From: Octopus sinensis
Taxonomy: Eukaryota
Direction: 5' to 3'
NCBI RefSeq assembly: GCF_006345805.1
Contig: NC_043016.1
Coordinates: 10,850,001 to 10,914,000, forward strand
DNA: 64,000 nucleotides
Shown: positions 7,861 through 62,846 of the stretch, one piece after another
Layout of the letters: each line of letters begins with the position of its first letter
Numbering within the stretch: the stretch's first letter is position 1
Position numbers and translations under genes: made by a program
The notes under the pieces: generated by a model
What the model was told of the DNA's origin: nothing
Seen by the model: the letters and a program-made list of their open reading frames with translations, nothing else
Databases searched by the model: none

Positions 7861-7880
7861 TTCCATTTTTATCACCAAAC

Positions 7881-8036
7881 CTGTGGAAGTTCCAGAAGTG
7901 TTTTGATCTTGACTTCTTCATAAAGCTGTAACCTCAATTCAAAGATCTGTATTTTCTTCATCTGCGCTTTATCATAATCTTCATTTTCCACAGCTTGACG
8001 CTTCTCTACCTCAAGTTTGCCAAGTTTCTCTCCACT
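7881..8036 (-). CDS. CEP104: CEP104 coding exon (coiled coil), 156 nt, phase 0-0
   Basis: tttgcAG|AGT GGA...CCA CAG|GTttgg; SGEKLGKLEVEKRQAVENEDYDKAQMKKIQIFELRLQLYEEVKIKTLLELPQ versus VGERLGRYEVEKRCAVEKEDYDLAKEKK. Confidence 0.95.
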
Positions 8037-8186
8037 CTGCAAATGAAGAGAGATATTCTCACTATGACACCTAAGAAATTATAAATCCTCTCGAATCGTT
8101 TTGGCCTATATACATATATACCTCAAAATTCTATATATGTATGTATGCATCTATGTATGTATATATATATATATGTGTGTGTATAT

Positions 8187-10026
8187 GAGACTGAGCCGTG
8201 AAAATTGAAAAGGAAGAACGCTTCAGATAAGAATACAGAATCGCGGCAAACGCCAGTCGCAATCCAAAAACCTTCTTTGCCCATGTCCAACGGAATTCCC
8301 GCTTGAACAACCAAATTGCAACATTGGTAGACTCAACAAGTGTATCAATTGAGGACCCTTATCAGCAGAGTCAGTTATTTGCCAAGGCTTTTCCAACAAT
8401 TTTCAAACATGATGGTTGTTAACCCCCTCCATTTGATAGATCAGTACCACCAATGCCTAGATTGGTCATCACTCGGGACGAAGTTGAACACGTTATTCAA
8501 GGCCTTGATGTCAACAAGGGTCACAGCCCTGACAGCATACACCCATAGGTTATCAAAGCATTGGCTCCAGTCATCTGCGAGCATTTAACACTTCTATTCA
8601 ATATGTCATTGGCAATGGGTGTTATACCTGTGGACTGGAGAACAGCGATAATCTGCCCAATTTTCAAGAAAGGGAGCCGCGAAGACCAGCTTAACTACCG
8701 ACCAGTTTCCCTTACTTCAATAATCAGCAAGATGTTCGAAACCATCCTTAAGAAAAGTATGGTGCTCCACCTCCAAAACACAGCCTCTATCTCTGATTCC
8801 CAACACAGCTTCGTGCCGAAGAGGTCATGCTTGAGCAACTTACTGGTAATGGAAGAATTGGTGACGCGTATCCTGGATGATGGTGATGCTGTTGACATCG
8901 TTTTATTGGACTTTGCCAAAGCTTTTGACTCGGTTAACCACCGCCTATTACTTGTTAAGCTTCAAGCATATAGTTTCCATCCAGATATTGTACGATGGGT
9001 TGGTGCCTTCCTCTCAGATCGCTCCTTCCAAGTCCAAGTTAATGGTTTGCTGTCCGACGTCTCCAGTGCGAGCAGTGGCGTGCCTCAAGGTTCAGTGCTT
9101 GGGCCCTTAATGTTTTTAGTCTTCATAAATGACTTGCCCGACGACCTCACGCAACACACCCTTCTATTTGCCGATGATGTCAAACTGGTCGCTCCTCGTG
9201 GTGATATAGATGATCTTCATCAATGCCTCCACCAAGTTTGGAGATGGTCTAACGAATGGGACCTGTGTCTGAATGTGTCAAAGTGCTGTCATCTGCCTGT
9301 TGGCTCCTCTCCTGTAACTCAACTTGATTTCAAACCGGGTCGTCTGCTGCTGGAGAGGACCGACCAGGTAAAGGACCTGGGTATCTTGGTGGATTCTTCC
9401 ATTTTGCCTTCGGCCCAGTGCGTCCATGCTGCCAACAAAACACGCAGAGTTCTGTTTTTGATTCGACGGTCATTTGGAATGCTCACAGCAGCCATATTCC
9501 TACCGCTCTATGTCACGCTGGTGAGTACAGGATTCAAGCCTCTTCTTTTTATCTTCTCAAAGACATACATCATCTCGAAAGAGTCCAGAAGCTGGCTACC
9601 CGCATGGTTCTTGGTCTCAAGCATTTGTCTTATGAAGAAAGGCTGAAGACGCTTGACCTTTATTCTCTAGAAAAACGACGACGCCGTGATGATCTCATTC
9701 TCGCTCACAACATCATAAGCAGAAAGTGTAACCTCTTGAAAGAGCTGTTCTTCACACCTGCTCCAGAGCGTCGGCTGCGGGGTCACTCCGAAAAGCTCTA
9801 TGTGCGACGATTTCATCTCAATCAAAGGCGAGGGGCTTTCTCCATCCAGGTTGCGGATCCGTGGAACAAGCTGCCAGACGAGATAGTTACGATCGCTCGG
9901 TTCAAAGCCTCTCTTGACCAGAAATGGCCTGAACTCTTTGCATGAACACCCTCCCTGTACATAACTCCATGTCCCCCTACATGGTCTTGCTTTTTGCTTT
10001 TTGAGCCAAAAAATTAACTTAACTTA
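8187..10026 (+). mobile_element. 5'-truncated CR1-type LINE (RT domain with frameshifts), antisense to CEP104
   Basis: ORFs 8561-9646 and 9418-9945: QHSFVPKRSCLSNLL, LDFAKAFDSVNH, GVPQGSVLGPLMFLVFINDL, LFADD, LERVQKLATRMV, WNKLP; short 3' UTR ending (taact)n. Confidence 0.95.
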
Positions 10027-15847: not shown

Positions 15848-15991
15848 AGAGACGATAAGAAATGGAGCAATAATTAACAGCGAGAAGTGGATCAATGATG
15901 TTTTAAAGTCATTGCTTAATTAAACAATGACTTTAAAACACCATTGATCCACTTCTCATTGTTAATTATTGCTCCTTTTCTTAGCCTCTCT
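15848..15991. repeat. Near-perfect ~130-bp palindrome centred on TTAATTAA
   Basis: taagaaatggagcaataattaacagcgagaagtggatcaatgatgttttaaagtcattg pairs with 15924-15983. Confidence 0.9.
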
Positions 15992-20737: not shown

Positions 20738-21177
20738 CTTTGAAGTACAATACCTATTTCTTTATTGCCTACAAGGGGCTAAACACAGAGGGGACAAACA
20801 AGGACAGACATGGGTATTAAGTCGATTACATCGACCCCAGTGCGTAACTGGTACTTAATTTATCGACCCCCGAAAGGATGAAAGGCAAAGTCGACCTCGG
20901 CGGAATTTGAACTCACAACGTAACGACGGACGAAATACTGCTAAGCATTTCACCCGGCGCGATAACGTTTCTGCTCCAGTTCACTCATTTGTAGAAATGA
21001 GTTATGATATCACTGGTGCCAAGCTGTGTCGGCCCCTTTGCCTTTCCCTTGGATAACAATAGAGGCGGCGAGCTGGCAGAAACGTTATCGCGCCGGGCGA
21101 AATACTTAGCAGTATTTCGTCCGTCGTTACGTTGTGAGTTCAAATTCCGCCGAGGTCGACTTTGAAGTACAATACCT
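20738..21177. mobile_element. Family-B SINE with inverted head duplication and a captured SINE fragment, flanked by an 18-bp direct repeat
   Basis: ctttgaagtacaatacct at 20738 and 21160; arms 20886-20974 and 21076-21164. Confidence 0.8.
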
Positions 21178-23634: not shown

Positions 23635-24870
<1,236 letters not shown>

Positions 24871-25710
24871 CAAGAAAGATTTAAAAATTGAAAGAGTATG
24901 AAGTTAAAGAGAGAGGGTGATAAAAAGGGTAGGAGAGAAAGAGGAGGAGATGGGAAGATGAGAAAAAGAAGTGTGAATAATGGAAGGCATTATATAGAAT
25001 GTTGATAGAAAGTACGTAAACATGGATGGAAGCTCAATAGAGATTTATATAATTAAGTTGGAAGTGTTGCTCAATTTTATCTGCTTCAAGGAACAGACAT
25101 TGTCAAGTAAACTGTCCAGAAAAGCATGTGATACGATGATGGGGACGGTGGCGATGATGGCGACGGCGATGATGGCGAGGGAGATGGGCGATATGACGTG
25201 CTGTGTGTGTGTGTGTGTGTGTACGTGGGTGATGTGTGTACGTGGGTGATGTGTGTACGTGTATGTGTGTGTGTGTGTGTGATGTGTGTGTACGCGCGTG
25301 TGTGTTACATAGAAGGTGTGTGTTTGTGTGTGTGTGCGTGCGTGATGTGTGTGTACGCGCGTGTGTGTGTGTGTGTGTTACATAGGTGTGTGTGCGTGCG
25401 TGATGTGTGTGTACGCGCGTGTGTTACATAGGTGTGGGTGTATGTGTGTGCGTGATGTGTATATACGCGCGCGTGTGTGTTACATAGAAGTAGACAGCGG
25501 GAACTAGAGAAAGAGAGAGAGAGGGAGTAGTCGTTGTAGAGAGTAAGACGGCTAGATATACTATAAGTAAAGGTGTTGTGGTTGGAAGAGGTTGATAGAG
25601 AGAGAGAGAGAGACAGAGGGGAGATGAGAGAGAAAGGAGAGAGATAAAAAGTCTGACAGACTGAGAAATAGATGAAGCGTAGAGATAGTGAGAGAGAAAG
25701 AGTCAGAGAC

Positions 25711-25741
<31 letters not shown>

Positions 25742-26529
25742 AGGCGACAACCATTGAATGTGAGAATGTGTGTGTTTAAGCATGTCTTTGCGTGTTGTAT
25801 GCAAGTGTGTGTCTGTATATATATATATATATATAATATATATATATATGTGTGTGTGTGTGTTGTGTGCGTGTGTCTGTGTAGAGGACAGAGATAAACT
25901 GAGAGTAAGAGGGAGAGAGACATGGAGAGAGAGAGGGAGCTATAAAGATAAGGGGAGTAGAGAGAGAATGAGGAGACAGACAGAAAGATAGACCAGCGAG
26001 GGGAGATAGTGGAAAAGAGAGGGAGGCATACAGACCCACACACACACACATATGTAAATGTATGTGTTCATGTGTGTGCATGTGAGTGTGTGGTATATTG
26101 TGTGTAACTATGTGTGTTGTGTGTGTGTGTGTGTGGAGTGGAGAAAGGAAGTAATGAAGTAAAATGATGGCGCTTCTAAGCCATGGAAATATTGTTCTGA
26201 GAGAGATGTTAAGACATGGGAAGACCATATAAAGAAAGACACTGTTTGCTCTCAATCAGTCAGGCAGAACTTTCAACTGAATCGAAATCAAAGGAACATC
26301 CCAAGAACTTAAAGTTTTACGACCATAAACACACACACACACACACATACATACATATATATACATATATATATATATAACATATATATATATATATACA
26401 TATATATATATGCATATATATATACATATATATATACATTATATATACATACATACTACATACATATATATATACATATATATATACATATATATATACA
26501 TATATATATAACATATATATATACATACA

Positions 26530-27909: not shown

Positions 27910-28230
27910 TGTGAGTGGATTTGGTAGATGGAAACTGAAAGAAGCCTGTTGTATCATCATCATCATCATCATCATTTAGCGTCCGCTTTCCATGCTAGCA
28001 TGGGTTGGACGGTTCAACTGGGGTCTGTGAAGCCGGAAGGCCGCATCAGGCCCAGTCTGATCTGGCAGGGTTTCTAGATCAGACTGGCCTGATGCGGCCT
28101 TCTGGCTTCACAGACCTCAATGAACCGTCCAACCCATGCTAGCATAGAAAGCGGACGCTAAATGATGATGATGATGATGATGATGATACAACAGGCTTCT
28201 TTCAGTTTCCATCTACCAAATCCACTCACA
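27910..28230. repeat. 321-bp chimeric palindrome (family-A SINE segment plus RTE tail, inverted)
   Basis: 27910-28063 is the reverse complement of 28076-28230 with a few mismatches. Confidence 0.9.
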
Positions 28231-30328: not shown

Positions 30329-31853
30329 TTCAACATAAATATTTTATTGTTAAAATACATAACATATATGCTGTGGATTTGAACTTAAGAACTCTAAGTT
30401 GCTGATTCAATACTTTATTCTCTCAGCCATTGTATTTCTACCTAAGTTAGGGTAAAATGCAATGTTTTGTTTGTTTTTGTTGAGTCCTAAGCTTTGATTA
30501 GAAACTATTAGTTGAATAATCTTTTAGTAAATTTTCTTGTAAATATTTTATGCATCTGTAAAGTGTCTTGTAAAATAGATAAAACATACTAGAGGTTTCA
30601 ATGTTTCAAATAATAGACAAGGCATTCCTTTTTTGATTATTTGCATCTACTGGTTAAACGGTCTTCCAGCAGTAATTCCTGTAAGCGTTGCCTGATTATG
30701 AAAGTTGCTCTGCAAATCACACAAAGTATAATGGAAGATTCCATTGATCTAATGGCTTTCCATCTCACCATCTTAATTTAAGCCTAAATATCATGAATTT
30801 GCATTACACAGCATTATACATATGAGCTGAATGTAAACTAATTTCCATAACTCAACCCCCCCCCCCGCCAATCAGTTGCATTACCATTGTCGATATTTGA
30901 ACCCCAACTGCAAAGACATTCAGTGAAGTATCACAAGTGAGCCACCACAGTTTCATGTGGTTGATCTATAAATCAACCAATCAGCACGAAATCATGACAT
31001 GGACTCTTGGATGATCCAAACTTCACTCCATCTTCATCATCATCAACATCATTTAACGTCCGCTTTCCATGCTAGCATGGGGTGGATGATTTGACTGAGG
31101 GCTGGTGAACCAGATGGCTGCACCAGGCTCCAATCTGATCTGGCAGAGTTTCTACAGCTGAGTGCCCTTCCTAACACCAACCACTCCGAGAGTATAGTGG
31201 ATGCTTTTATGTGCCACCGGTACAAAGGCCAGTCAGGTGGTACTGGAACGGCCATGCTCAAATGGTGTTTTTTACGTGTCACCTGCACAGGAGCCAGTCC
31301 AGCGGCACTGACAACAACCTCACTGAAACATTTTTTCACATGCCAGAATTTGTAAATTTATCAATTTAAAAAAAAAAAAAAAAGGTGGGAAAACGTCAAA
31401 ATAATCGAACAGCGTTCAGTCGACCCAGTTTTAACTCCCGAAAGTAGCCACGGCTGAAGTTAAAATTAATTTATCGACACAAAGAAATACAATTTCGTCC
31501 TGTTGTTATGACGACAGAAACATCAGCAAAGATACTTGCAACAGCAGCAACAACAGTAACAACAACGACAACAAGAGTAAGGACAATGTGTACAGCAGCA
31601 GTAGCAGCAATAGCGGCAGCAGCACAAACTGCAGAAACGACAATAGTAGCAACATCAGCAACAACAACAACAACAACAAGATAACAAAACTGTATGGAAG
31701 ACAACCATGACAACAGCAACAATAACATGAGCTGCTGATCTCGATGCTGGAGTCGGTGGAGATTAAGCGTGCATTCTGCACCGAAATAAGAGTGTTTCTC
31801 TCAGTGTATCTACCACAGAACACCCATGTTTAAGTGGGGACAGATATTACCTC

Positions 31854-32618
31854 GGATCTTTTCCTTTTGATAGCCAGTTTTCAACACAATTTCTAGTTAA
31901 CTAAACACTTTTAAACTTCGTATACTGGTGGAATGTGTCAAAGTAAAACATTTTTTTCTCTTGGCTTTCTTGAGAAAATTGTAATTTGCAGGTTTAGCGT
32001 GGTTTGATTTTTCGAATTTTAACCAATCCTATGCCCTCTATTGAGCTGGAATCATTTGCTGCGTCTAAAACTGAGACAACATCCTGTCACTAATCCTAAC
32101 CCTCACCCTAACCCTAAATTTTAGCCTTTCGTTTTTTTTTTCTTAATTGTTAAATTAATTTAAGGATAACAATTAAGAAAAAAAAAAAACGAAAGGCTAA
32201 AACGAAAGCAATAGAAAATAATTTTAATTTAACAATTAAGAAAAAAAAAACGAAAGCAAAAACTCAAAACAAAAACAAAACGAATAATTTTAGACACGCG
32301 TAACAATTAAATTAATTTAACAATTAAGAAAAAAAAAAAACAAATGCTAAAATTTAGGGTTAGTGTTAGGGTTAGTGACAGTATGTTGTCTCAGTTTTGG
32401 ACGCAGCAGATGATTTTGGCTTTGTAGAGGGCATGGGTTGGTTGAAGTTCGAAAAGTTGAACTACGTTGGGCTTGCAAATTGCAACTTTCTCGGGGGGGG
32501 GGGGGGGGCAGGAGAGAGAAATGTTTTGTTTTGACGCATTCTTCCAGTGTGCGAAGTTTAAAAGTGTTTAGTTGGCTGGAAATTGTGTTGAGGGCTGCCG
32601 TTCAAAAGGAAAAGATCC
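31854..32618. mobile_element. Merlin-type foldback MITE (GG...CC termini, perfect 8-bp TSD ATTACCTC) with (TTAGGG)-like motifs in the arms
   Basis: attacctc at 31846-31853 and 32619-32626; ~270-bp inverted arms. Confidence 0.85.
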
Positions 32619-32679
32619 ATTACCTCTTCATATTGATACTGCCTCTGTCACTTACATATATATTCTAAAAACATTCGGG

Positions 32680-32970
32680 CGAGGTCGTTGCCAGTGCCAC
32701 TGAACTGGCTCCTGTGCAGGTGGCACATAAAAAGCACCATTTGTATGTAGTGGCCGTTGCCAGTACCGCCTGACTGGCCCTCGTGCTGGTAGCACGTAAA
32801 AGCACCCACTACACTCTCGGAGTGGTTGGCATTAGGAAGGGCATCAAGCTGTAGAAACTCTGCCAGATCAAGATTGGAGCCTGGTGCAGCCATCTGGTTT
32901 GCCAGTCCTCAGTCAAATCGTCCAACCCATGCTAGCATGGAAAGCGGACGTTAACTGGTGATGATGATGA
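32680..32970 (+). mobile_element. RTE-type 3' tail copy
   Basis: Two hairpin units plus gtggttggcattaggaagggcatc...cggacgttaa (gat)n. Confidence 0.8.
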
Positions 32971-34801
32971 AGATCTACTATGATGGTTTCCCTGTAGTTG
33001 TCAAATTGTAGTTACTGAAAGAAACATCAATTGATTTGAGTTCATTGGTCTTGGGTGAAGTCCTGGTGTTGATCTAATTGATTGAACCACCACTCTATTC
33101 TTGACAATTTGGCCTTTTTTTTTCTATAGTTTGATCTATGGCTGTGTTGTAAGAACTTTGCTCCTCAACCTCATAGTTTTGGGTTCAGTTCTACTACATG
33201 GTACTGTGGGTGAGTGTCTTTTGCTATAACCCTAGGCTAACCAAAGCTTTCAGATGAATCTGGTGGACAGAAACTGAAACGCTTGAAATGAAAGAGTGGT
33301 TTTGAATCTGGTGACCACCTACCTGAAATGGTAGATAGATTGTTTACATTGTTGTTGCTTTGTTTTATATAAGCTATTCCAAGTGGGAACATGTCCAATT
33401 ACGGAGATGTACTTGCATAGCGAGTAACTTGATCTGAGATTGTGTGCTGGAACGAAAACAATTGCAGCGTGGAAGGTGTTTATAAGCCATTTAAGAAACA
33501 CACAAAACCCGTTAGATTCACTTCAACATTTAAGTTTAATTTGTCAAAATGTTTTCGTCACTTTCAGACCGTGACCTGTTCACTGACAAAAATCCGAGAT
33601 GCATCTCATGTCCAATGTTTTACTATTTGGGGTTATTTATGAATAACAATGATGTAATATAGGGTATAAAGGAAACCAGAATCTGAGAACTAGGGTTCTG
33701 CTAAATTTGTATTTCAATTTTGAAAGAGTTTCAAGAGAATCAGGTATTTTCAGGTCAACAATGTTTTTTTTTGGGGTTTTTTTTTTCTTGTTTTGTTTTA
33801 GGATATGGTCAGTTTTTTATAGTTCTGATACTTTTGGATTTCCTGGAATTTGGCCAAGGATGAAAGGCCAAGTCAACCTCAATGGAATTTGAACTCAGAA
33901 TGTAAAGATGACAAAATATTGCTAAGCAATTCACCTGGCATTCTAACAAATAATAATGATGATGAGGATGATGGTGATAGTGGCGATGGTGGCGGCGGTG
34001 TTGATGATGATGATGATGATGATAAGTGGCTCTCGTGGCTTCTGATCTTAACTGACTGGAAGTGTTATCATGTACATTGTTTTGTCTTGGTATAAAAGAT
34101 GGGCTACAGCAAATATTCTGCTCAATACCACAGATTTGCTTGTCAGTTGTTTGACCTTAACCAGTTGACCATGTCCCTTAGTGGCTGACGATATGTGCAT
34201 CTCTGATCATGAGCAGAAGTAATGGGAGAGCATCATAGCCATGTGTTGAGAGGGATTCTTTGGGGTTTGAATAATTCACCTCTGGAAACATGGGTGCTTT
34301 GTCCAACATTCTTAAACAACCCTTGTTCAGGGACCTTTTAAGCAGAATGGGTTACTCGATGAGAAAAAAATTCAAAGTGGGTCCCACCTGCAAGGTCATG
34401 TGCTGTTTATCTTGATATGAGATCACCATGTCACACACATATGGTTGTGATGCATGTGCCTGGTGTATCCTTATCAGACGGGTAGTCATGATGGGTATAC
34501 TGGGCTTCGTATATTTTATCCCAGTGTCACTTTGATGGCATGCTCTGTTCTCTCACTCATTAATAATAATGATAATTATCATCATCATCATCATCATCTT
34601 CATTATTATTATCATTATGAAAGCAGTGAGCTGACAAAATCATCAAACTACCAAAAGGTTCGGTGGTATTTCTTCTGTTTACATTCTGAATTCAAATGCT
34701 GCTGAGGTCAACTTTGCATTTTACCCTTTTGGAGTCAATAAAATAAGTACCAGTTACACACTGGGGTCTAGGTTTTGGGTCTTTTGCCTATAACAGAAAA
34801 G

Positions 34802-40089: not shown

Positions 40090-40519
40090 GGCAATCTTTC
40101 GTCTCTAGTAGACCTTTCCGTCGATTTCCGTAAAAATTTTTTTTTTTTTACATATGGGCTTGCGGGAACTTTTGAAGTAATGAGAGCGAAAGAGACTAAG
40201 AGAGAGCGATTGTATGACGAGGGAAGTTCTTTTGAAGTTACCGTGCATGGGAAGCTTTGATGTACATGTGTGTGTGTGTGTGTGTTTGATGGGGTGTGGG
40301 AGACAGACAGTATGTTGTGTAAGTGAAGTGCTTCTGTTAGTGTGTGTGAAGAGACAGAGAGAGTAATGTGTGAAAGAAAGAGATAACTGAAATTTTTTAC
40401 TCGGTGTATGTGTATATGTATGTATATCACTTCAAAAGTTCCTGCAAGCCCATATGTAAAAAAAAAAAAAAATTTTTACGGAAATCGACGGAAAGGTCTA
40501 CTAGAGACAAAAGATCGCC
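40090..40519. mobile_element. Merlin-type MITE, perfect 8-bp TSD GTTTACTG
   Basis: ~90-bp TIRs with 3 substitutions; gtttactg at 40082-40089 and 40520-40527. Confidence 0.9.
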
Positions 40520-42642: not shown

Positions 42643-42870
42643 GGTACTACTTAAGAATGGTCCCGGTGCGCGCACTCGAGTATCCGTGCTAGCTAGTCGT
42701 GACTAATCGATCCTTACTTTATATTTTTGTTTTATTTACTTTGCTTAAAAAATTTTTTACTTTGTGTTTTTGTGTTTTATTTACTTTGCTAGGTAGTAGT
42801 TGTAGGATCGACTAGTCACGACTAGCAAGCGCGGATGCGCGCACCGGGACCATTCTTCTTAAATAGTACC
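42643..42870. mobile_element. Merlin-type MITE (GGTAC...GTACC; TSD CTCCTTTC/TTCCTTTC, 7 of 8)
   Basis: ~70-bp TIRs with an AT-rich spacer. Confidence 0.8.
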
Positions 42871-44783: not shown

Positions 44784-44813
44784 TGTAGAAAATTTAAATA
44801 ATAGATTACTCAC

Positions 44814-44923
44814 GAAGAACAGCTTCTTGCTTCTTTTTTTCGAGTTTACGAATGAGCTGAGCAACTCCTGGGTCTTGGTACATATCAAATGCCAAGTCAT
44901 CCAATGGCGAAATATAATCTGGC
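44814..44923 (-). CDS. CEP104: CEP104 coding exon, 110 nt, phase 2-1
   Basis: ttgctAG|G CCA GAT...CTT C|GTgagt; PDYISPLDDLAFDMYQDPGVAQLIRKLEKKKQEAVL, nearly identical to human DYISPLDDLAFDMYQDPEVAQIIRKL. Confidence 0.97.
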
Positions 44924-45021
44924 CTAGCAAAAACAAACAACAACAACAACAAACCGTATAGTATCACTGAGCAACTATAGACACACACCAACACACACAT
45001 ACATGTTTACATACAAGGAGC

Positions 45022-47693: not shown

Positions 47694-48378
47694 CTATTTC
47701 TTTACTACCCACAAGGGGCTAAACACAGAGGGGACAAACAAGGACAGACACACGGATTTAGCTGATTACATCGACCCCCAGTGCCTAACTGGTACTTATT
47801 TAATCGACTCCGAAAGGATGAAAGGCAAGTCGACCTCGGCAGAATTTGAACTCAGAACATAGCGGCAGACGAAATACCTATTTCTTTACTACCCACAAGG
47901 GGCTAAACACAGAGGGGACAAACAAGGACAGTCACACGGATTAAGTCGATTACATCGACCCCAGTGTGAAACTGGTACTTATTTAATCGACCCCGAAAGG
48001 ATGAAAAGCAAAGTCGACCTCGGCGGAATTTGAACTCAGAACGTAGCGGCAGACGAAGCACCGCTAAGCATTTCACCCGGCGTGCTAACGATTCTGCCAG
48101 CTCGCCGCCAATGATAACCGAAATTATGATATTAATGAGAGGAGCAAAAGATGCCCACAGATCTGCTTCTCTAACATACTTAGGGCAAAGTGCTTAGCGG
48201 TATTTCGTCTGTCGTTACGTTCTGAGTTCAAATTCCGCCGAGGTCAACTTTGCCTTTCATCCTTTCGGGGTCGATAAATAAAGTACCAGTTTTGCACTGG
48301 GGTCGATATAAGCGACTCAGTCCCTTCGTCTGTCCTTGTTTGTCCCCTCTATGTTTAGTCCCCTGTGGGCAATAAAAA
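47694..48378. mobile_element. Family-B SINE dimer (-, 47694-48109) plus an inverted family-B copy (+, 48183-48378)
   Basis: Same gacgaaatacctatttcttt junction as at 10.9 kb. Confidence 0.85.
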
Positions 48379-48769
48379 AATATATACTTACCAAGCCACC
48401 CCATCCACATTTTATTCTTCTATTTTTATTCTCTTTTTCATATTCAGCTTAAACCTTGACCTCAAATCTCTCTCTCTCCTCCCAGCCATGTGGTTGGAAA
48501 ACAGGCTTCTTACCACACTGCCACTCCTTCGCCTATGCAGACATTTATCACCAACAACACTGTAAACGTTTTTGTCTGTCGCCACCGCCACCGTTATAAT
48601 ATCATCTACTTATTTATTAATCGATATATTTGTGTGAACACTTAAACGGGTATGTGAACTGTATACCATGGAGAAATTATAGGTTGATGTGAAAAGAGTG
48701 AAAAAGAGAGAGAAATAACACTCTGATTAACGAATCAGACAACAGCAACAACAAGGGGTGAAGTAGGGG

Positions 48770-49590
48770 GGGGAACAGTAGCAGCAGGAAGGAGGAGTAA
48801 GTGGAGCAGCAGGAAGGAGAAGAAGTAGGAGGAAGAGGAGGAGAAGAAGAAGAAAAAGTAGGAGGAAGTGGAGCAGCAGGAAGGAGAAGAATTAGAAGGA
48901 GGAGGAGGAGAAGAAGAAGAAAAAGTAGGAGGAGGAGGTGGAGAAGTAGGAGGAAGAGGAGAAGAAGAAGAAAAAGTAGGAGGTGGAGCAGCAGGAAGGA
49001 GAAGAATTAGAAGGAGGAGGAGGAGAAGAAGAAGAAAAAGTAGGAGGAGGAGGTGGAGCAGCAGGAAGGAGAAGAAGTAGGAGGAAAAGAAGAAAAAGTA
49101 GGAGGAGGTGGAGAAGCAGGAAGGAGAAGAAGGAGGAGGAAGAGAAGGAGAAGAAGAAAAAGTAGGCGGAGGTGGAGCAGCAGGAAGGAGGAGAAGAAGA
49201 AGAAAAAGCAGGAGGAGTAGGTGGAGCAGCAGGAAGTAGAAGAAGTAGGAGGAAGAGAAGGAGAAGAAGAAGAAAAAGTAGGAGGAGGTGGAGAAGCAGG
49301 AAGAAGAATTAGAAGGAGGAGGAGGAGGTGGAGCAGCAGGAAGGAGAAGAATTAGGAGGAGGAGGAGAAGAAGAAAAAGTAGGAGGAGGTGGAGCAGCAG
49401 GAAGGAGAAGAAGTAGGAGGAAGAGAAGGAGAAGAAGAAGAAAAAGTAGGAGGAGGCGGAGCAGCAGGAAGGAGAAGAATTAGAAGGAGGAGGAGGAGAA
49501 GAAGAAGAAAAGTAGGAGGTGAAGCAGCAGGAAGAAGGAGGAGAAGAAGAATTAGGAGGAGGAGGAGGAGGGGAGAAGAAAAAGAAGAAC
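48770..49590 (+). repeat. ~820-bp polypurine tract of modular GGA/GAA/GCA units
   Basis: gtggagcagcaggaaggagaagaa and gaagaagaaaaagtaggagg recur many times. Confidence 0.95.
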
Positions 49591-49637
49591 AACAACGACA
49601 ATAGCAACAACGAAAACACAAGTAAAACAACAAATAC

Positions 49638-49699
49638 CTATTAAATCCAGCCAAAGGAGATTCTTTGTCTTGGTTTGGGATTTCTTCCGGATCCATCAC
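49638..49699 (-). CDS. CEP104: CEP104 coding exon (variable linker), 62 nt, phase 0-2
   Basis: atctttAG|GTG ATG...AAT AG|GTattt; VMDPEEIPNQDKESPLAGFN(R); bridges the phases of the flanking exons exactly. Confidence 0.82.
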
Positions 49700-49914
49700 C
49701 TAAAGATAGAGAATGATTATAATTACAATCTTTGAAATCAAAATTCTCTGATTTCCTTGTTCCAAACTATAAGCTTTAAGTTCCATTAAGATCTTTATTT
49801 GTCCTGACACTGGAAATTCTAAGTTCTATAGAATCTTCATAGGGGAGAATTCCAAATTCTGTCATATATTCATATATGTTAGAATTACATTGGATGTTCT
49901 GAACCAGCATTTCT

Positions 49915-50330
49915 AGGCACAGGAGTGGCTGTGTGGTAAGTAGCTTGCTTACCAACCACATGGTTCCGGGTTCAGTCCCACTGCGTGGCACCTTGGGCAA
50001 GTGTCTTCTACTATAGCCTCGGGCCGACCAAAGCGCTGTGAGTGGATTTGGTAGACGGAAACTGAAAAGAAGCCCGTCGTATATATGCATATATATATAT
50101 ATATATGCGTGCGTGTATGTTTGTGTGTCTGTGTTTGTCCCCCTAGCATTACTTGACAACCGATGCTGGTGTGTTTACGTCCCCGTCACTTAGCGGTTCG
50201 GCAAAAGAGACCGATAGAATAAGTACTGGGCTTACAAAGAATAAGTCCCGGGGTCGAGTTGCTCGATTAAAGGTGGTGCTCCAGCATGGCCGCAGTCAGA
50301 TGACTGAAACAAGTAAAAGAGTAAAGAGAG
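49915..50330 (+). mobile_element. Young full-length SINE family A
   Basis: Same sequence as 46773. Confidence 0.9.
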
Positions 50331-53324: not shown

Positions 53325-54446
53325 CTACATAGAAAAAAAAAACAAGAGAAAAAAATTACAGAAATTATATTGTGTTCCCAATGGCATCAAAGCTAAGTAA
53401 TTAAGAATAGACTAATGAGCTAACATAATGTTGTGAAACCATAAAATCATTTCGACATATTTTCACATGTATTTTATTTGATTTTGCAATTCAGTATTGA
53501 TTTTTAAGTGTTTTTTTTTTTAAATTTATATATTTTTAAATATATTTGCCGGAACAGGTGTAAAGTTGGATAAATTGATTGAAGGTGAGGTTTATTTTTT
53601 TCCCCATTTATTTCTTAAAAGACAAAGCAGAAAATGATATTAGACAGGTAGTGAGAGCAAAAACATAATAATTGAGTGTTAATGATACTTCTTTTCAAAA
53701 AAGAGCAAGGGAGAGAATTTTTTGATTCATAATTAAAAATTCATTATTAGCAACAAAAACGGCAATCTGTATCTCTTACTCAATGTAGATACACTGTAAG
53801 AAAGCCACAATACTTAAGTATAGATATTTAAGAATCTATAGTAGATTCTTAAGAAAGAATCTACTATAGACATATAGTGCTAAAAAATACAGAAGTACCA
53901 GCAGCAGGTAAAAAGTGTGACAGTAATAGCAGCAATGGTGGAACTGCTAGATCATGTGATTCTTGTGAAGCAAGTCATAAAAGGCGGCAATATGATGTAA
54001 TGATCGTCTGCCCAAACAAGCACAATTGTTGGTATCCCATTGGTTAGAATTACTGCCCATATATAAATTCTAAACTTTCGTCAAAGAAATCTTTCACAAA
54101 ATACAGTTCTTAGAATTCAGATATGAGCAGTTATAAAAACCCTGATTTTGGGGAAATTACTCAGTGATCATAGGATGTTACTAAACTCCACAACACTCAC
54201 TCCTTGAGATATTGGCTATTTTTTAAGCCATGTCTATGACTTATGGTCAGTAAATAATGTAAACCTGCATATTTGTATATCTTCAACAGCAAGTATCCAC
54301 TATCATTGCATGCTTGTGCCTTTTAACACTATATGAGATGCTTTCTCAAGACAAATATTGCAGTAGTATTGTGCTTTCTTAAAGTATATCCACATTGAGT
54401 AGGATATATAGATTGCTTTATAATTAAAAATTAAATGAAGATATAT

Positions 54447-54849
54447 TACTCTTTTACTTGTTTCAGTCATTTGACTGCGGCCAGCTGGAGCACCGCCTTT
54501 AATCGAGCAAATCGACCCCAGGACTTATTCTTTTGTAAGCCCAGTACTTATTCTATCGGTCTCTTTTGCCGAACCGCTAAGTGACAGGGACATAAACACA
54601 CCAGCATCGGTTGTCAAGCAATGCTAGGGGGACAAACACAGACACACAAATACACACATGCATATATATACATATATACATATATACGACGCGCTTCTTT
54701 CAGTTTCCGTCAACCAAATCCACTCACAAGGCTTTAGTCGGCCCGAGGCTATAGTAGAAGACACTTGCCCAAGATGCCACGCAGTGGGACTGAACCCGGA
54801 ACCATGTGGTTGGTAAGCAAGCTACTTACCACACAGCCACTCCTGCGCC
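54447..54849 (-). mobile_element. Young full-length SINE family A (inverted)
   Basis: Reverse complement of the 46773 copy. Confidence 0.9.
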
Positions 54850-55750
54850 AAAATATATTGTAGAAGTGAGTTTGATAGGTGCAGTAATTAATCATTCTTT
54901 AGTTATTTAGTTTGTTTTGGCCATTACAGCTAAGACCATACTGGAGCATCATCCTCAAGTGTGAATATTCTTTGTCCCTTTTTATTTGTCTCTCCCTCTT
55001 TATACATCCAGTTAGTGACAGTGTGATGGCGTAAGAAATCATAACTGTTATCATCTGTATTGTAATTTAATCATATACCTAACAGCTGTAAGGTTAAAGA
55101 ACTGAATTACAAACGACACAGTCACGAGTTCAAATCTTGCTATTACTAAAATGACTTGTGTTAACCGGAGCTGCTTTGTCTTTTACTTCTGCAACTCAGA
55201 CATTCCTGACCCCCTTCCTCTCTCAACCATCTGGCAACCTTGTTTTGTCATGACCATCCAGGTCCCACACTAATCACTGTATCCAGTGCTTCATCCTTAC
55301 AAACAGGATTAAGGCCTCCAAAGTCATGGACACTGACCCAGTGAGTAAAAGAAAAGAAAAATCACTGTGTTGTGCCACAATACACAAAACTGTTAACTTG
55401 TTTCAGAAAAATACCCCCCCCCCCACATGTATTATGTGTCTCATTCTTCATGGTTGATGATGCATGATTAATACAAAACAATGTGGCTCTCGTGCCGGTG
55501 GCACGTAAAAAGCACCCGCTACACTCTCGGAGTGGTTGGCATTAGGAAGGGCATCCAGCTGTAGAAACTCTGCCAGATCATACTGGAGCCTGGTGCAGCC
55601 ACCTGGCTCGCCAGTCCTCAGTCAAACCCTCCAACCCATGCCAGCATGGAAAGCGGATGTTAAACGACGACGATGATGATGATGAATGTAAATAAATAAA
55701 TATTACATTTCAGAAAATAATCTGAATGCTAAAGGATTGAACATTTAGCA

Positions 55751-56665: not shown

Positions 56666-57842
56666 ACTTTTGACGGAATAATCCAAACGCAAAAGGATTA
56701 AGTTATTCCAGTGGTGCATTGGCAGAGTCTTTGGAATATGAAAATGAATGCTTTGTTGTATTTGTTCTGAGATTCTGCTAAGTCCAAACCTCACCAACAC
56801 CAATTCTACCTTTCATCCTTTCAAGGCTGATAAATAAATAGCAGTCAAGTACTAGAACCAGTTTTTTTATCTCTTTCTCTCTTCCTACATGAAATAGACT
56901 GTAGTCAGACATTGAAAAGAATGGAATCCATCAAACTTGAAAATCTGTCCAAGACATGCCATATATATCAGAATGTTGTCTCTATAACTCCATCAGGTGT
57001 TGCAAATCCAATGTAACACTAACAGAAGCGTCAGAGCCAAATTTTCAGTCGAAGGTGAAATAACTTTGTTCTTTCCTTCTTCAAGTTTTAGTGTGGGGAA
57101 CGTTGAGTGTAGGGAAAGATTGGCAAGCTGGCAGAAACATTAGCACACCGGGCGATATTCTTTGTGGTATTTCGTCTGCCGCTGAGTTCTGAGTTCAAAT
57201 TCTGCTGAGGTCGACTTTGCCTTTCATCCTTTTGGAGTTGATAAATTAAGTACTAGTTATGCACTGGGGGTTGATGTAATCGACTTAATCCGTTTGTCTG
57301 TCCTTGTTTGTCTCCTCTATGTTTAGCCCCTTGAGGGCAATAAAGAAATAAGATTGGCCAGAGATGTAATAGAAAATATTTGTCCAGGGTGCCATGCAGT
57401 GAAACTGAACCTGATACCACATGGTTGGGAAGTAACCTTCTTAACCACACAACCATACATGTACCAATAAATATATGTGAATGTGTGTATATGTGCAGGT
57501 AAAGTGAACAAGGTAAAGTCACTTTCTCGTGTCATGCCGACTCATAAGGGCCAGTTTCCCAGTTTCCATAGCAAATAATAAATTCTCCCAATGGATGGGA
57601 CCCCAGTCCATCACAGGATTACTCATTTTTTTGCCACCTGAGTGGAGTGGAGCAAAGTGAAATGAAGTGTCTTGCTCAAGGACACAATGTGTCACCAGGT
57701 CCAGGAATCGAAACCACAATCTTATGATCACAAGTCCAACACCCTAACCAATAAACCACATGTACCTCCACATATGTGTGAAAATGTGTGTGTATTTGTG
57801 TGTGTGTCTGTGTGTGCAAGTATGTGTGTGTAATCAAATTAC

Positions 57843-57981
57843 CTGATTGTATAGATTGTATTTGTTAATATAGTTCTTGTGCAAGTTTAGCTTCAGGAAC
57901 ATCCCCGTGGCATCAACATGAACTGATTTGAGCTCCCGAACACGAAAGTCTGTCTTCTCATTGTTTGCCAAAGATATGTAA
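57843..57981 (-). CDS. CEP104: CEP104 coding exon (jelly-roll domain), 139 nt, phase 2-0
   Basis: tttccAG|T TAC ATA...AAT CAG|GTaatt; YISLANNEKTDFRVRELKSVHVDATGMFLKLNLHKNYINKYNLYNQ versus human YVSLCDNEKTGCKARELKSVYVDAVGQFLKLIFHQNHVNKYNIYNQ (recalled). Confidence 0.97.
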
Positions 57982-58873
57982 CTGGAAATAGAAAAATCAT
58001 GATTATTAAATCATTGCTTTAAAAGTAAAATGAACATAAAATATTTTTAGCAGTGAAAATCCACGTAGATAAAGGCTATAAATGATAATTTGTAAATATT
58101 TGATAGAAAAATCAAAGGCTGTCTGTGAGACTTGAACCCACACCTCTAGACATGACAGATGTTTTAGGGAAAATGCATTACAGTATTTAACTATGGCCCT
58201 TTACATCCTTAGATCAAATGTGACCTTTGTCTTTCTGGGTTTCTTAAAATGAAGTACTCATCAATTACAAGGTGAGTAAATTTTATTATTATTATTATCA
58301 TGGAGGCGCAATGGCCCAGTGATTAGGGCAGCGGACCCCCTCTCATAGAATCGTGGTTTCGATTTCCAGACCAGGCATTGGTCCACGAGGCTCCAGCAGG
58401 GGGTGGTGGTGAACCCTGCTGTACTCTTTCACCACAACTTTCTCTCACTCTTTCTTCCTGTTTCTGTTGTACATGTATTTCAAAGGCCCAGCCTTGTCAT
58501 ACTCTATGTCACATTGAATCTACCCGAGAACTGTTAAGGGTAGACATGTCTGTGCAGTGCTTAGCCACTTACACATTAATTTCATGAGCTGGCTGTGCCA
58601 TTGATTGGATCAACCGGAACCCTCGTCATCGTAACCAACGGATTGCCACTACTATTATTATTATCACTCTGTTTTTCAGAAGGCAGCAAGCTGGCAGAAT
58701 CATTAGCATGCTGGACAAAATACTTAGCAGTATTCCACCTGTCACTACATTCTGAGTTCAAATTCTGCTGAGGTCAATTTCGCCTTTTGGGGTCGACGTA
58801 ATAAGTACCAGTTGAGCACTGGGTTTGATATAATTGACTGTACCCCTCCCACCAAATTTCAGGCCTTGTACCT

Positions 58874-60944: not shown

Positions 60945-61310
60945 TCATCATCATCATCATCATCATCATCGTTTAACGTCCGTTTTCCGCGCTAGCATGG
61001 GTTGGACGGTTCGACCGGGGTCTGGGAAGCCAGGAGGCTGCACCAGGCTCCAGTCTGATCTGGCAGTGTTTCTACAGCTGGATGCCCTTCCCAACGCCAA
61101 CCACTCCGTGAGTGTAGTGGGTGCTTTTTACGTGCCACCTGCACAGGTGCCAGGGGGGGGGGAGTCTGGCATCAGCCACGATCGGTTGGTGCTTTTAACG
61201 TGCCACCGGCACGGAAGCCAGCCAAGGCGGCGCTGACATTGGCCACGTTCTGATGGTGCTTTTTATGTGCCACCGGCACAGAAGCCAGTTGAGGCGGCGC
61301 TGGCATCGGA
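60945..61310 (-). mobile_element. RTE-type 3' tail with two hairpin units
   Basis: Reverse complement of the 34845-35325 family. Confidence 0.8.
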
Positions 61311-62746: not shown

Positions 62747-62846
62747 NNNNNNNNNNNNNNNNNNNNNNNNNNNNNNNNNNNNNNNNNNNNNNNNNNNNNN
62801 NNNNNNNNNNNNNNNNNNNNNNNNNNNNNNNNNNNNNNNNNNNNNN
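62747..62846. other. Assembly gap (100 N)
   Basis: Direct reading. Confidence 1.

What the first reader, a model, noticed from the sequence alone, without database searches (positions are those of the whole stretch)
31846..32626. Foldback transposon carrying an ADAR-type A-to-G hyper-editing signature in genomic DNA
Seen: over ~215 aligned bp the arms differ at about 40 G:T-type positions on the + strand (about 31 left-T/right-G and 9 left-G/right-T), versus 1 A:C and about 6 transversions. Neutral transitions would give G:T and A:C about equally. Read as A-to-G on the + strand, the contexts fit ADAR preference. A after G is mostly spared (gAAAA to gAGGG, gAcAc to gAcGc, tAgAc to tGgAc), UAG/UAA sites are hit, and AAGAAAG becomes a 16-G run. 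The outer 17 bp of the TIR and the 8-bp TSD are intact. The other inverted repeats here (15848, 27910, 40090, 42643) show no such bias. Known: coleoids have very high ADAR activity, and long hairpins are hyper-edited. Inference: an edited hairpin RNA was written back into DNA (cDNA-mediated conversion, or an edited retrocopy later moved by transposase), or ADAR acted on DNA in a hairpin or R-loop; the + strand is the CEP104 template strand. Consequence: the sense pre-mRNA hairpin is weakened by ~40 A:C mismatches. This would be an RNA-editing-to-genome feedback acting on DNA transposons.
Basis: partly seen in the sequence, partly recalled or inferred. Interest (0 to 1): 0.88.

Follow-up and report, generated by a model that had tools for sequence, protein, structure and literature searches.

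The report
One-strand hypermutated foldback transposon, direction unresolved

Summary
A 765-bp foldback element (31854-32618) has a perfect 8-bp target-site duplication and perfect 17-bp termini. Its arms align over 281 bp with 40 G:T-type mismatches on the + strand (31+9), 1 A:C and 12 others (binomial p=4e-11). In 190 other inverted self-matches in the window the two classes are balanced (1751:1927). So are they in the inverted SINE-like pair bracketing the element (13:13) and in 37 retroelement copies.

New here: all 40 transitions lie in one 189-bp tract of the stem. The inner 75 bp and the A-rich centre are untouched.

The ADAR reading is not established. Read as C-to-T, the same sites give an equally strong context signal (CC; p=1e-4 versus 1e-3). 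Cross-simulations show each signal is largely a by-product of the other. The A-to-G reading also needs a 2.6-fold rate difference between arms (p=8e-5) and zero edits at 67 paired central A's, while one per-C rate fits both arms.

No other family copy could be found in any collection, so polarity is unresolved: about 0.35 C-to-T, 0.30 A-to-G, the rest wobble misincorporation, artefact or other. The host gene and template strand are confirmed; the coleoid origin is not.

The parts
31846..31853 (.). left target-site duplication ATTACCTC
   Evidence: identical 8/8 to 32619-32626
31854..32141 (+). left arm of the foldback element
   Evidence: aligns over 281 bp with the reverse complement of 32330-32618
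31854..31870 (+). perfect 17-bp terminal inverted repeat (left)
   Evidence: 17/17 complementary to 32602-32618; P about 0.009 at the tract's mismatch density
31878..32066 (+). hypermutated tract, left arm
   Evidence: holds all 31 left-T/right-G and 9 left-G/right-T pairs
32067..32141 (+). inner left arm, no transitions; telomere-like CCCTAA-type hexamers at 32090-32118
   Evidence: 0 transitions, about 6 transversion-type differences and one 6-bp unit indel; P(0 edits) about 1e-8 under either reading
32142..32329 (.). A/T-rich centre holding the first two of three partial right-side copies (32167-32202, 32224-32256; the third, 32307-32355, runs into the right arm) complementary to the 45-nt unit 32119-32163
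   Evidence: nested perfect inverted repeats of 33, 32, 23 and 21 nt; 67 paired A's and 6 paired C's on the + strand, none changed
32330..32398 (+). inner right arm, no transitions; TTAGGG-type hexamers at 32353-32376
32399..32594 (+). hypermutated tract, right arm
   Evidence: partner positions of all 40 G:T pairs
32493..32508 (+). G16 homopolymer inside the right tract
   Evidence: partner is GCTTTCTT (31964-31971), an 8-nt length difference
32330..32618 (+). right arm of the foldback element
32602..32618 (+). perfect 17-bp terminal inverted repeat (right)
32619..32626 (.). right target-site duplication ATTACCTC

Best explanation
The element is a short, non-coding, cut-and-paste-type foldback (MITE-like) transposon in a CEP104 intron. 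It, or its progenitor copy, suffered a single burst of strand-coordinated, deamination-type hypermutation. All about 40 changes are of one chemical polarity on the + strand and lie in a 189-bp tract of the stem.

By a narrow margin I take the changes to be C-to-T on the + strand. In that reading an AID/APOBEC-like cytidine deaminase, or an equivalent process, acted while that strand was single-stranded. It converted about 43% of the C's in the tract (31/63 in the left arm, 9/30 in the right), preferentially the second C of CC. The termini stayed intact either because only copies with intact ends can still transpose, meaning the burst came before the last insertion, or because the burst was tract-limited.

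Shown: the element's anatomy, the polarity, the confinement to one tract, and the absence of any comparable bias elsewhere at the locus. Inferred: that it was one burst, its timing, the enzyme and, critically, the base direction. The A-to-G (ADAR-type) reading is almost as likely.
For: - Polarity: 40 G:T versus 1 A:C.
- Excess over the transversion clock: about 12 G:T expected, P(40 or more) about 1e-10.
- Balanced nulls.
- One per-C rate fits both arms (31/63 versus 9/30, Fisher p=0.12; LRT p=0.17 after context). The A-to-G reading needs 9/57 versus 31/74 (Fisher p=0.002; LRT p=8e-5).
- CC context: 19/25 versus 21/68, p=1.3e-4.
- The untouched A-rich, C-poor centre is unsurprising for C-to-T (P=0.06-0.17) and very surprising for A-to-G (P=6e-12 to 3e-17).
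- Ordinary decay in this window's repeats is dominated by C-to-T and G-to-A.
- In a large survey, C>T and G>A clusters were the commonest single-type clusters in DNA transposons: 268 + 181, against 142 of all other types, among 17.9 million copies (PMC4866542).
- Molluscs encode AID/APOBEC-like deaminases (22 in oyster; PMC5889660), and invertebrate members are DNA mutators in E. coli assays (PMC5956068).
Against: - Direction was not polarised, because no other family copy could be obtained.
- A single-strand-specific deaminase should be hindered by a stem that folds on itself, yet the changes are in the stem.
- 22 C's in the inner left arm, many in CC context, are untouched (P about 6e-8).
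- AID/APOBEC-like genes are not documented for cephalopods in the text I read, and the host species is unidentified.
- If the burst happened in place, transcription would expose the minus strand, not the + strand.
- The A-to-G reading reproduces the full published ADAR neighbour order and does slightly better in the cross-simulation (0.06-0.08 versus 0.035-0.043).
Confidence: 0.35

Rival explanations
1. ADAR-type A-to-G. A + strand RNA hairpin of the element was hyper-edited (A to I) and the edited sequence reached germline DNA. The route would be reverse transcription followed by conversion or re-mobilisation by transposase, or direct ADAR deamination of dA in the template (+) strand of an RNA:DNA hybrid.
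For: - A long perfect stem is the natural ADAR substrate, and changes of one type on both arms of the same duplex segment are what ADAR produces.
- Fraction edited by 5' neighbour: T 53%, A 30%, C 11%, G 7% (p=0.001). By 3' neighbour: G>C>A>T (not significant).
- The pattern holds separately for the 9 left-arm sites, all of which have a 5' T or A.
- The density (31% of A's in the tract) is typical of hyper-editing.
- ADARs deaminate dA in DNA/RNA hybrids in vitro with the same neighbour preferences (PMC5389660), and the + strand is the CEP104 template strand.
Against: - The arms differ 2.6-fold in per-A rate even after context adjustment (p=8e-5).
- 67 perfectly paired A's in the centre and 47 A's in the inner arms are unedited, including four UAG triplets (P about 1e-11 to 1e-17 and 2e-8).
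- The context signal is largely reproduced by a C-to-T process.
- The route needs an antisense (+ strand) transcript and an RNA-to-DNA step that still leaves exact TIRs and a TSD.
- The adjacent inverted SINE-like pair, itself a dsRNA former, shows 13:13.
- No retroelement copy in the window carries an A-to-G cluster.
Confidence: 0.3
2. One-arm tract made by wobble-prone synthesis. A stretch of about 190 nt of one arm's + strand was re-synthesised, by gap or break repair or fold-back priming, using its complement or the other arm as template. A very inaccurate polymerase left G.T wobble misincorporations unrepaired, so that one arm carries both A-to-G and C-to-T changes.
For: - It explains with one contiguous tract why everything lies between 31878-32066 / 32399-32594 and why only G:T pairs occur.
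- The two G:T classes have homogeneous rates: G opposite T 31/74, T opposite G 9/30, p=0.28. A:C-type occurs in 1/49 and 0/32.
- The centre shows signs of repeated fold-back or rearrangement events (nested perfect repeats).
Against: To my knowledge, error rates of 30-40% per eligible site exceed any replicative or repair polymerase. Pol iota inserting G opposite T is the exception, but it is distributive and not known to insert T opposite G at 30%. No precedent is known to me.
Confidence: 0.1
3. Assembly, base-calling or polishing artefact at a hairpin with a homopolymer.
For: Hairpins and a G16 run are hard to sequence. The 8-nt length difference sits in the homopolymer. The window comes from a scaffolded assembly (100-N gap at 62747-62846). 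Systematic single-type mismatch clusters have been reported as sequencing errors (PMC2873906).
Against: - The changes are of one type only, not any-base-to-G.
- Other palindromes and inverted pairs in the same window are clean.
- CEP104 exons and a 361-aa reverse-transcriptase ORF are unbroken.
- The errors would have to spare the termini, the inner arms and the centre.
Confidence: 0.08
4. Ordinary divergence filtered by selection or biased repair (G:U-tolerant selection on a functional hairpin RNA, or removal of A:C by hairpin mismatch repair), or arms taken from two ordinary subfamilies.
For: G:U wobbles keep the + strand RNA hairpin very stable (-418 kcal/mol, against -308 for the other strand).
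Against: Filtering can only remove mismatches. From the window's own ratio of transitions to transversions, 12 transversions predict about 12 G:T, and 40 are seen (P about 1e-10). Twelve pair-breaking transversions are tolerated. The 0 transitions in the inner arm versus 40 next to it do not fit uniform decay. Ordinary subfamily divergence is not strand-polar.
Confidence: 0.05

Closest known systems
ADAR hyper-editing of inverted-repeat hairpin RNAs (clusters of A-to-G; e.g. PMC4365171, listed but not read; the motif and the reports of fixation in retroelement copies are from my own knowledge)
   Same: Dense single-type transitions in a long stem. 5' G depleted and 3' G enriched when read as A-to-G. 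Both arms affected.
   Different: Here the changes are in genomic DNA of an element with TIRs and a TSD, which has no RNA intermediate. The direction is unproven, the arms are unequally affected, and the centre and inner stem are spared.
AID/APOBEC strand-coordinated C-to-T (G-to-A) DNA editing of retroelements, and kataegis (PMC4866542)
   Same: Dense, strand-coordinated transitions of one type. A CC dinucleotide preference when read as C-to-T. One uniform per-C rate.
   Different: In that survey DNA transposons and invertebrates were the negative controls. The substrate here is a self-pairing stem rather than exposed single-stranded DNA. No deaminase gene is known for this unidentified host.
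ADAR deamination of deoxyadenosine in DNA/RNA hybrids (PMC5389660)
   Same: It would give A-to-G directly on the template DNA strand, which is the + strand here, with ADAR neighbour preferences.
   Different: It has been shown in vitro only. A hybrid would be contiguous, and the A-rich centre between the two tracts is untouched.
Fungal repeat-induced point mutation (RIP) (own knowledge)
   Same: C-to-T confined to duplicated DNA, dense, affecting both repeat copies, and often strand-coordinated within one event.
   Different: RIP is known only in fungi. Its CpA preference is absent here (by 3' neighbour: A 11/28, C 10/25, G 6/16, T 13/24).
MITE / foldback DNA transposons with 8-bp TSD, e.g. 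hAT-like (own knowledge)
   Same: Perfect terminal inverted repeats, an 8-bp TSD, a small size and no coding capacity.
   Different: The termini (GGATC...) do not match the hAT consensus as I remember it. The superfamily and the copy number are untested.

Membership tests
Cut-and-paste MITE / foldback transposon | Terminal inverted repeats | tested here: met
   17/17 perfect termini; arms pair over 281 bp
Cut-and-paste MITE / foldback transposon | Target-site duplication flanking the termini | tested here: met
   ATTACCTC 8/8 on both sides
Cut-and-paste MITE / foldback transposon | Multi-copy family with shared termini | not testable with these tools
   no second copy in the window; no animal genome collection is searchable by DNA
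Cut-and-paste MITE / foldback transposon | No transposase gene (non-autonomous) | tested here: met
   765 bp; longest stop-free stretch 84 codons; no related protein found in the two protein collections searched (about 5.8 billion sequences, and 1.84 billion representatives)
ADAR hyper-editing footprint | Ancestral base is A at the changed sites (A-to-G direction) | not testable with these tools
   needs the family consensus or a sister copy; all searches came back empty
ADAR hyper-editing footprint | Clustered changes of one type on one strand within a dsRNA-forming stem | tested here: met
   40 G:T versus 1 A:C, all within the stem; equally compatible with C-to-T
ADAR hyper-editing footprint | 5' G depletion and 3' G enrichment relative to unedited A's | tested here: inconclusive
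   present (p=0.001) but reproduced in part by a simulated C-to-T process (p=0.035)
ADAR hyper-editing footprint | Editing spread over the whole duplex and both strands | tested here: not met
   arms edited at 16% versus 42% (p=8e-5); inner 75 bp and centre (67 paired A's) unedited
AID/APOBEC-type strand-coordinated DNA editing | Ancestral base is C at the changed sites (C-to-T direction) | not testable with these tools
   the same limitation as for the ADAR direction test
AID/APOBEC-type strand-coordinated DNA editing | Dinucleotide target motif | tested here: inconclusive
   5' C 19/25 versus 21/68 (p=1.3e-4), but largely reproduced by a simulated ADAR-like process (p=0.06)
AID/APOBEC-type strand-coordinated DNA editing | Single-stranded DNA substrate (reverse-transcription intermediate, replication or transcription bubble) | not testable with these tools
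   the element has TIRs and a TSD, not retroelement features; the changes lie in a self-pairing stem
AID/APOBEC-type strand-coordinated DNA editing | Host encodes such a deaminase | not testable with these tools
   host not identified; molluscan members are known (PMC5889660)
Fungal RIP | CpA target preference | tested here: not met
   no 3' neighbour effect in the C-to-T reading (p=0.64)

The most novel reading that the evidence does not exclude
The changes are A-to-G made by ADAR, either on a hairpin RNA of a cut-and-paste transposon that was then copied back into germline DNA, or directly on the DNA strand of an RNA:DNA hybrid. That would be a heritable RNA-editing-enzyme footprint in a DNA transposon of an invertebrate, and this element then transposed or persisted with intact ends.
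Probability: 0.3. Interest if true: 0.85.

Novelty: new variant of a known kind. Interest (0 to 1): 0.55.

Why it matters
Dense, strand-coordinated, single-type hypermutation has been described for retroelements, mainly in vertebrates. In the largest survey I read, DNA transposons and invertebrates served as negative controls (PMC4866542). A clean 40:1 case in an element with TIRs and a TSD, in an invertebrate-like genome, therefore means one of two things. Either a nucleic-acid deaminase (ADAR or an AID/APOBEC-like enzyme) left a heritable mark on a DNA transposon, or an unknown, very error-prone synthesis acts on hairpins. If it is A-to-G, it would be direct evidence that RNA-editing activity can feed back into the germline genome. 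If it is C-to-T, it would point to DNA-deaminase activity against transposons outside vertebrates. It is one locus only, and a single alignment of family copies would settle the direction.

Tried and rejected
1. Other copies of the family in the window: none.
2. Spurious ORFs from the element used as handles in the protein collections: no hits. Two exact ORF look-ups also found nothing. The exhaustive representative search returned only an unrelated tandem-repeat protein.
3. Exact scans of the metagenome, prokaryote-genome and viral DNA collections with blocks conserved in both arms: 0 matches.
4. CEP104 exons used to reach the species or an orthologous intron: only short fragments of one conserved exon from other animals, at most 89% identical. 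The nearest exon is 12 kb from the element, beyond the 10-kb flank limit, so I dropped this route.
5. Neighbour context as a way to polarise the changes: rejected after the cross-simulation.
6. Transcription-coupled or locus-wide strand bias: rejected. Retroelement copies give 343 versus 366 changes projected on the + strand, and the flanking inverted pair gives 13:13.
7. Selection for a wobble-tolerant hairpin, or biased mismatch repair: rejected by the transversion clock.
8. Break-and-resection exposure of single strands, from a centre break or from the excised ends: rejected by reasoning, because it exposes opposite strands in the two arms and would give mixed G:T and A:C.
9. Nested insertion of the inner segment: rejected, because the inverted repeat runs seamlessly across the tract boundary and no direct repeat flanks it.
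10. RIP-like CpA preference: absent.
Full report
**What is there.** The finding's coordinates hold a 765-bp foldback element (31854-32618). It is flanked by a perfect 8-bp direct repeat, ATTACCTC (31846-31853 and 32619-32626), and ends in perfectly complementary 17-bp termini, GGATCTTTTCCTTTTGA. The left arm (31854-32141) and the right arm (32330-32618) pair over 281 positions. The A/T-rich centre holds three partial right-side copies of the complement of a 45-nt unit (32119-32163). These form nested perfect inverted repeats of 33, 32, 23 and 21 nt. The inner arms contain telomere-like hexamers. The element has no coding capacity. Its longest stop-free stretch is 84 codons, and no related protein exists in the collections searched. 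It lies in an intron of CEP104, which is on the minus strand: a CEP104_N exon at 57837-58010 scores Pfam E=6e-18, and further exon-like ORFs lie at 44809-45006 and 7875-8078. The closest CEP104 exon fragments in the protein collection are only 85-89% identical and come from other animals.

Of the 281 aligned pairs, 228 are Watson-Crick, 40 are G:T on the + strand (31 left-T/right-G and 9 left-G/right-T), 1 is A:C and 12 are transversion-type. The 40:1 split has a binomial p of 3.8e-11. The run is, however, 8 nt longer than its partner and needs one transversion in either reading.

**Controls.**
- In 190 other inverted-orientation self-matches of at least 80 bp in the window, the classes are balanced: 1751 G:T, 1927 A:C and 1873 other. 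None approaches the element's skew.
- Two SINE-like copies in inverted orientation bracket the element (31030-31321 and 32681-32974, 87% complementary) and show 13 G:T to 13 A:C.
- Thirty-seven copies of three retroelement families, compared with their consensus sequences, show ordinary decay dominated by C-to-T and G-to-A. Projected on the + strand the changes are symmetric (343 versus 366), and no copy is hypermutated.

There is therefore no locus-wide or transcription-coupled strand bias, and the skew is peculiar to this element. Using transversions as a clock with the window's own ratio of transitions to transversions, 12 transversions predict about 12 G:T and 12 A:C. Forty G:T is an excess (P about 1e-10) and one A:C is a deficit (P about 1e-4). 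Purifying selection on a wobble-tolerant hairpin, or biased correction of A:C, cannot create an excess, so a genuine hypermutation or an artefact is required.

**New anatomy.** All 40 transitions lie in one tract of the stem, 31878-32066 paired with 32399-32594. The outer 24 bp have none. Neither do the inner 75 bp, which carry only about 6 transversion-type differences and one hexamer-unit indel, nor the centre. At the tract's rates, the chance of no edit in the inner arms is about 2e-8 in the A-to-G reading and 6e-8 in the C-to-T reading. Both readings therefore need an extra assumption. Either the burst hit only a tract, or the part near the centre was rebuilt afterwards, which the rearranged centre makes plausible. 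The intact 17-bp termini and TSD are unlikely at the tract's mismatch density (P about 1e-3). That fits either a burst before the last transposition, with only copies that kept their ends still able to move, or a tract-limited event.

**Direction: the crux.**
- Read as A-to-G, the edited fraction by 5' neighbour is T 18/34, A 19/63, C 2/19, G 1/15 (p=0.001). By 3' neighbour the order is G>C>A>T (not significant). This is the ADAR order.
- Read as C-to-T, the edited fraction is 19/25 after C against 21/68 after other bases (p=1.3e-4), a CC preference.
- I simulated each process on its own reconstructed ancestor and scored the outcome under the rival reading. A true ADAR-like process yields most of the CC signal (expected difference 0.35±0.07, observed 0.45, p=0.06). 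A true CC-type process yields much of the ADAR-like signal (0.18±0.06, observed 0.29, p=0.035). Context therefore cannot polarise the changes.
- Other internal evidence leans mildly to C-to-T. One per-C rate fits both arms (31/63 and 9/30, p=0.12-0.17), whereas the A-to-G reading needs 9/57 versus 31/74 (p=0.002, and 8e-5 after adjusting for context). The 67 perfectly paired A's of the centre are all unchanged (P=6e-12 to 3e-17), while the centre has only 6 paired C's (P=0.06-0.17).
- In favour of A-to-G: a perfect stem is the natural substrate of ADAR and a poor one for single-strand-specific cytidine deaminases, and ADAR explains why one change type appears on both arms of the same duplex segment.

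I rate the two readings nearly equal: C-to-T about 0.35 and A-to-G about 0.30.

**A third reading.** All changes could lie in one arm as a single tract of about 190 nt, synthesised with G.T wobble misincorporations. It fits the geometry and the homogeneous rates of the two G:T classes (31/74 and 9/30, p=0.28; A:C-type 1/49 and 0/32). It demands error rates that, to my knowledge, no polymerase reaches (about 0.10). An assembly or base-calling artefact at a hairpin with a homopolymer cannot be excluded without reads. It is disfavoured because the changes are of one type only, other palindromes in the window are clean, and exons and a long reverse-transcriptase ORF are intact (about 0.08).

**Attempts to polarise with outside data all failed.** There is no second copy in the window. 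ORFs translated from the element found no relatives, and two exact ORF look-ups found nothing. Conserved blocks gave no exact matches in the metagenome, prokaryote-genome or viral DNA collections. No orthologous intron was reachable.

**Comparison with what is known.** Editing-type hypermutation footprints are established for retroelements. In the survey of 123 genomes, DNA transposons and invertebrates served as negative controls. Single-type clusters occurred in only about 3e-5 of DNA-transposon copies and were mostly G>A or C>T (PMC4866542). [quoted passage not shown] This offers a direct DNA route whose polarity would fit the CEP104 template strand, but a hybrid should be contiguous, and the A-rich centre is untouched. 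Molluscs encode AID/APOBEC-like deaminases, and invertebrate members are DNA mutators in E. coli assays (PMC5889660, PMC5956068). Cephalopods are not mentioned in the text I read. The CpA preference typical of fungal RIP is absent.

**Verdict.** The element is a MITE-like foldback carrying a one-off, strand-coordinated, tract-limited hypermutation. The ADAR interpretation is possible but not demonstrated, and on present evidence it is no better than cytosine deamination. The wider claim of an editing-to-genome feedback acting on DNA transposons has no support beyond this single copy. An alignment of family copies from the source genome would settle the direction at once.

Noticed in passing
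window 31030-31321 and 32681-32974: Two SINE-like copies in inverted orientation (87% complementary, about 1.4 kb apart) bracket the foldback element. Their mismatches are balanced (13 G:T, 13 A:C, 4 other). I used them as a local control.
   Followed up: yes
window 32090-32118 and 32353-32376: Telomere-like hexamer repeats (CCCTAA / TTAGGG variants) sit inside the inner arms of the element. The arms differ by one whole hexamer unit.
   Followed up: partly
window 32119-32355: The centre of the element has one left-side copy and three partial right-side copies of a 45-nt A/T-rich unit. They form nested perfect inverted repeats of 33, 32, 23 and 21 nt, which suggests repeated fold-back or centre-break rearrangements.
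   Followed up: partly
window 57837-58010, 44809-45006, 7875-8078 (minus strand): CEP104 exons. The first matches CEP104_N (Pfam E=6e-18). The others read ...DYISPLDDLAFDMYQDPGVAQLIRKLEKKKQEAVLRE and ...GEKLGKLEVEKRQAVENEDYDKAQ.... Three exons span more than 50 kb, so the gene is very large.
   Followed up: partly
window 8561-9945 (+): A LINE reverse-transcriptase ORF of 361 aa (RVT_1, E=1e-30) continues in a second frame to 9945, so this is a decayed non-LTR retrotransposon.
   Followed up: partly
window, e.g. 54446-54855, 60947-61307, 57122-57350 and 34 further copies: Three SINE-like families (14, 10 and 13 copies) show ordinary GC-to-AT-biased decay with no strand asymmetry and no hypermutated copy.
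   Followed up: yes
window 27910-28230, 15848-15991, 47872-48389, 20886-21164, 40090-40519, 42643-42870: Other palindromes or foldback-like inverted repeats (up to 320 bp at 92%, and 89 nt at 98%). None shows a G:T versus A:C bias. I did not check them for TSDs or family membership.
   Followed up: partly
window 31515-31730: A degenerate (CAA/CAG)n trinucleotide tract lies just upstream of the element.
   Followed up: no
window 62747-62846: A run of 100 N, which is a scaffold gap, so the window comes from a scaffolded assembly.
   Followed up: no
window 24001-26000 and 48001-50000: Blocks with strong G-over-C and A-over-T skew (GC skew 0.65 and 0.34), corresponding to long CT/GA-rich microsatellite-like tracts seen as low-complexity ORFs.
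   Followed up: no
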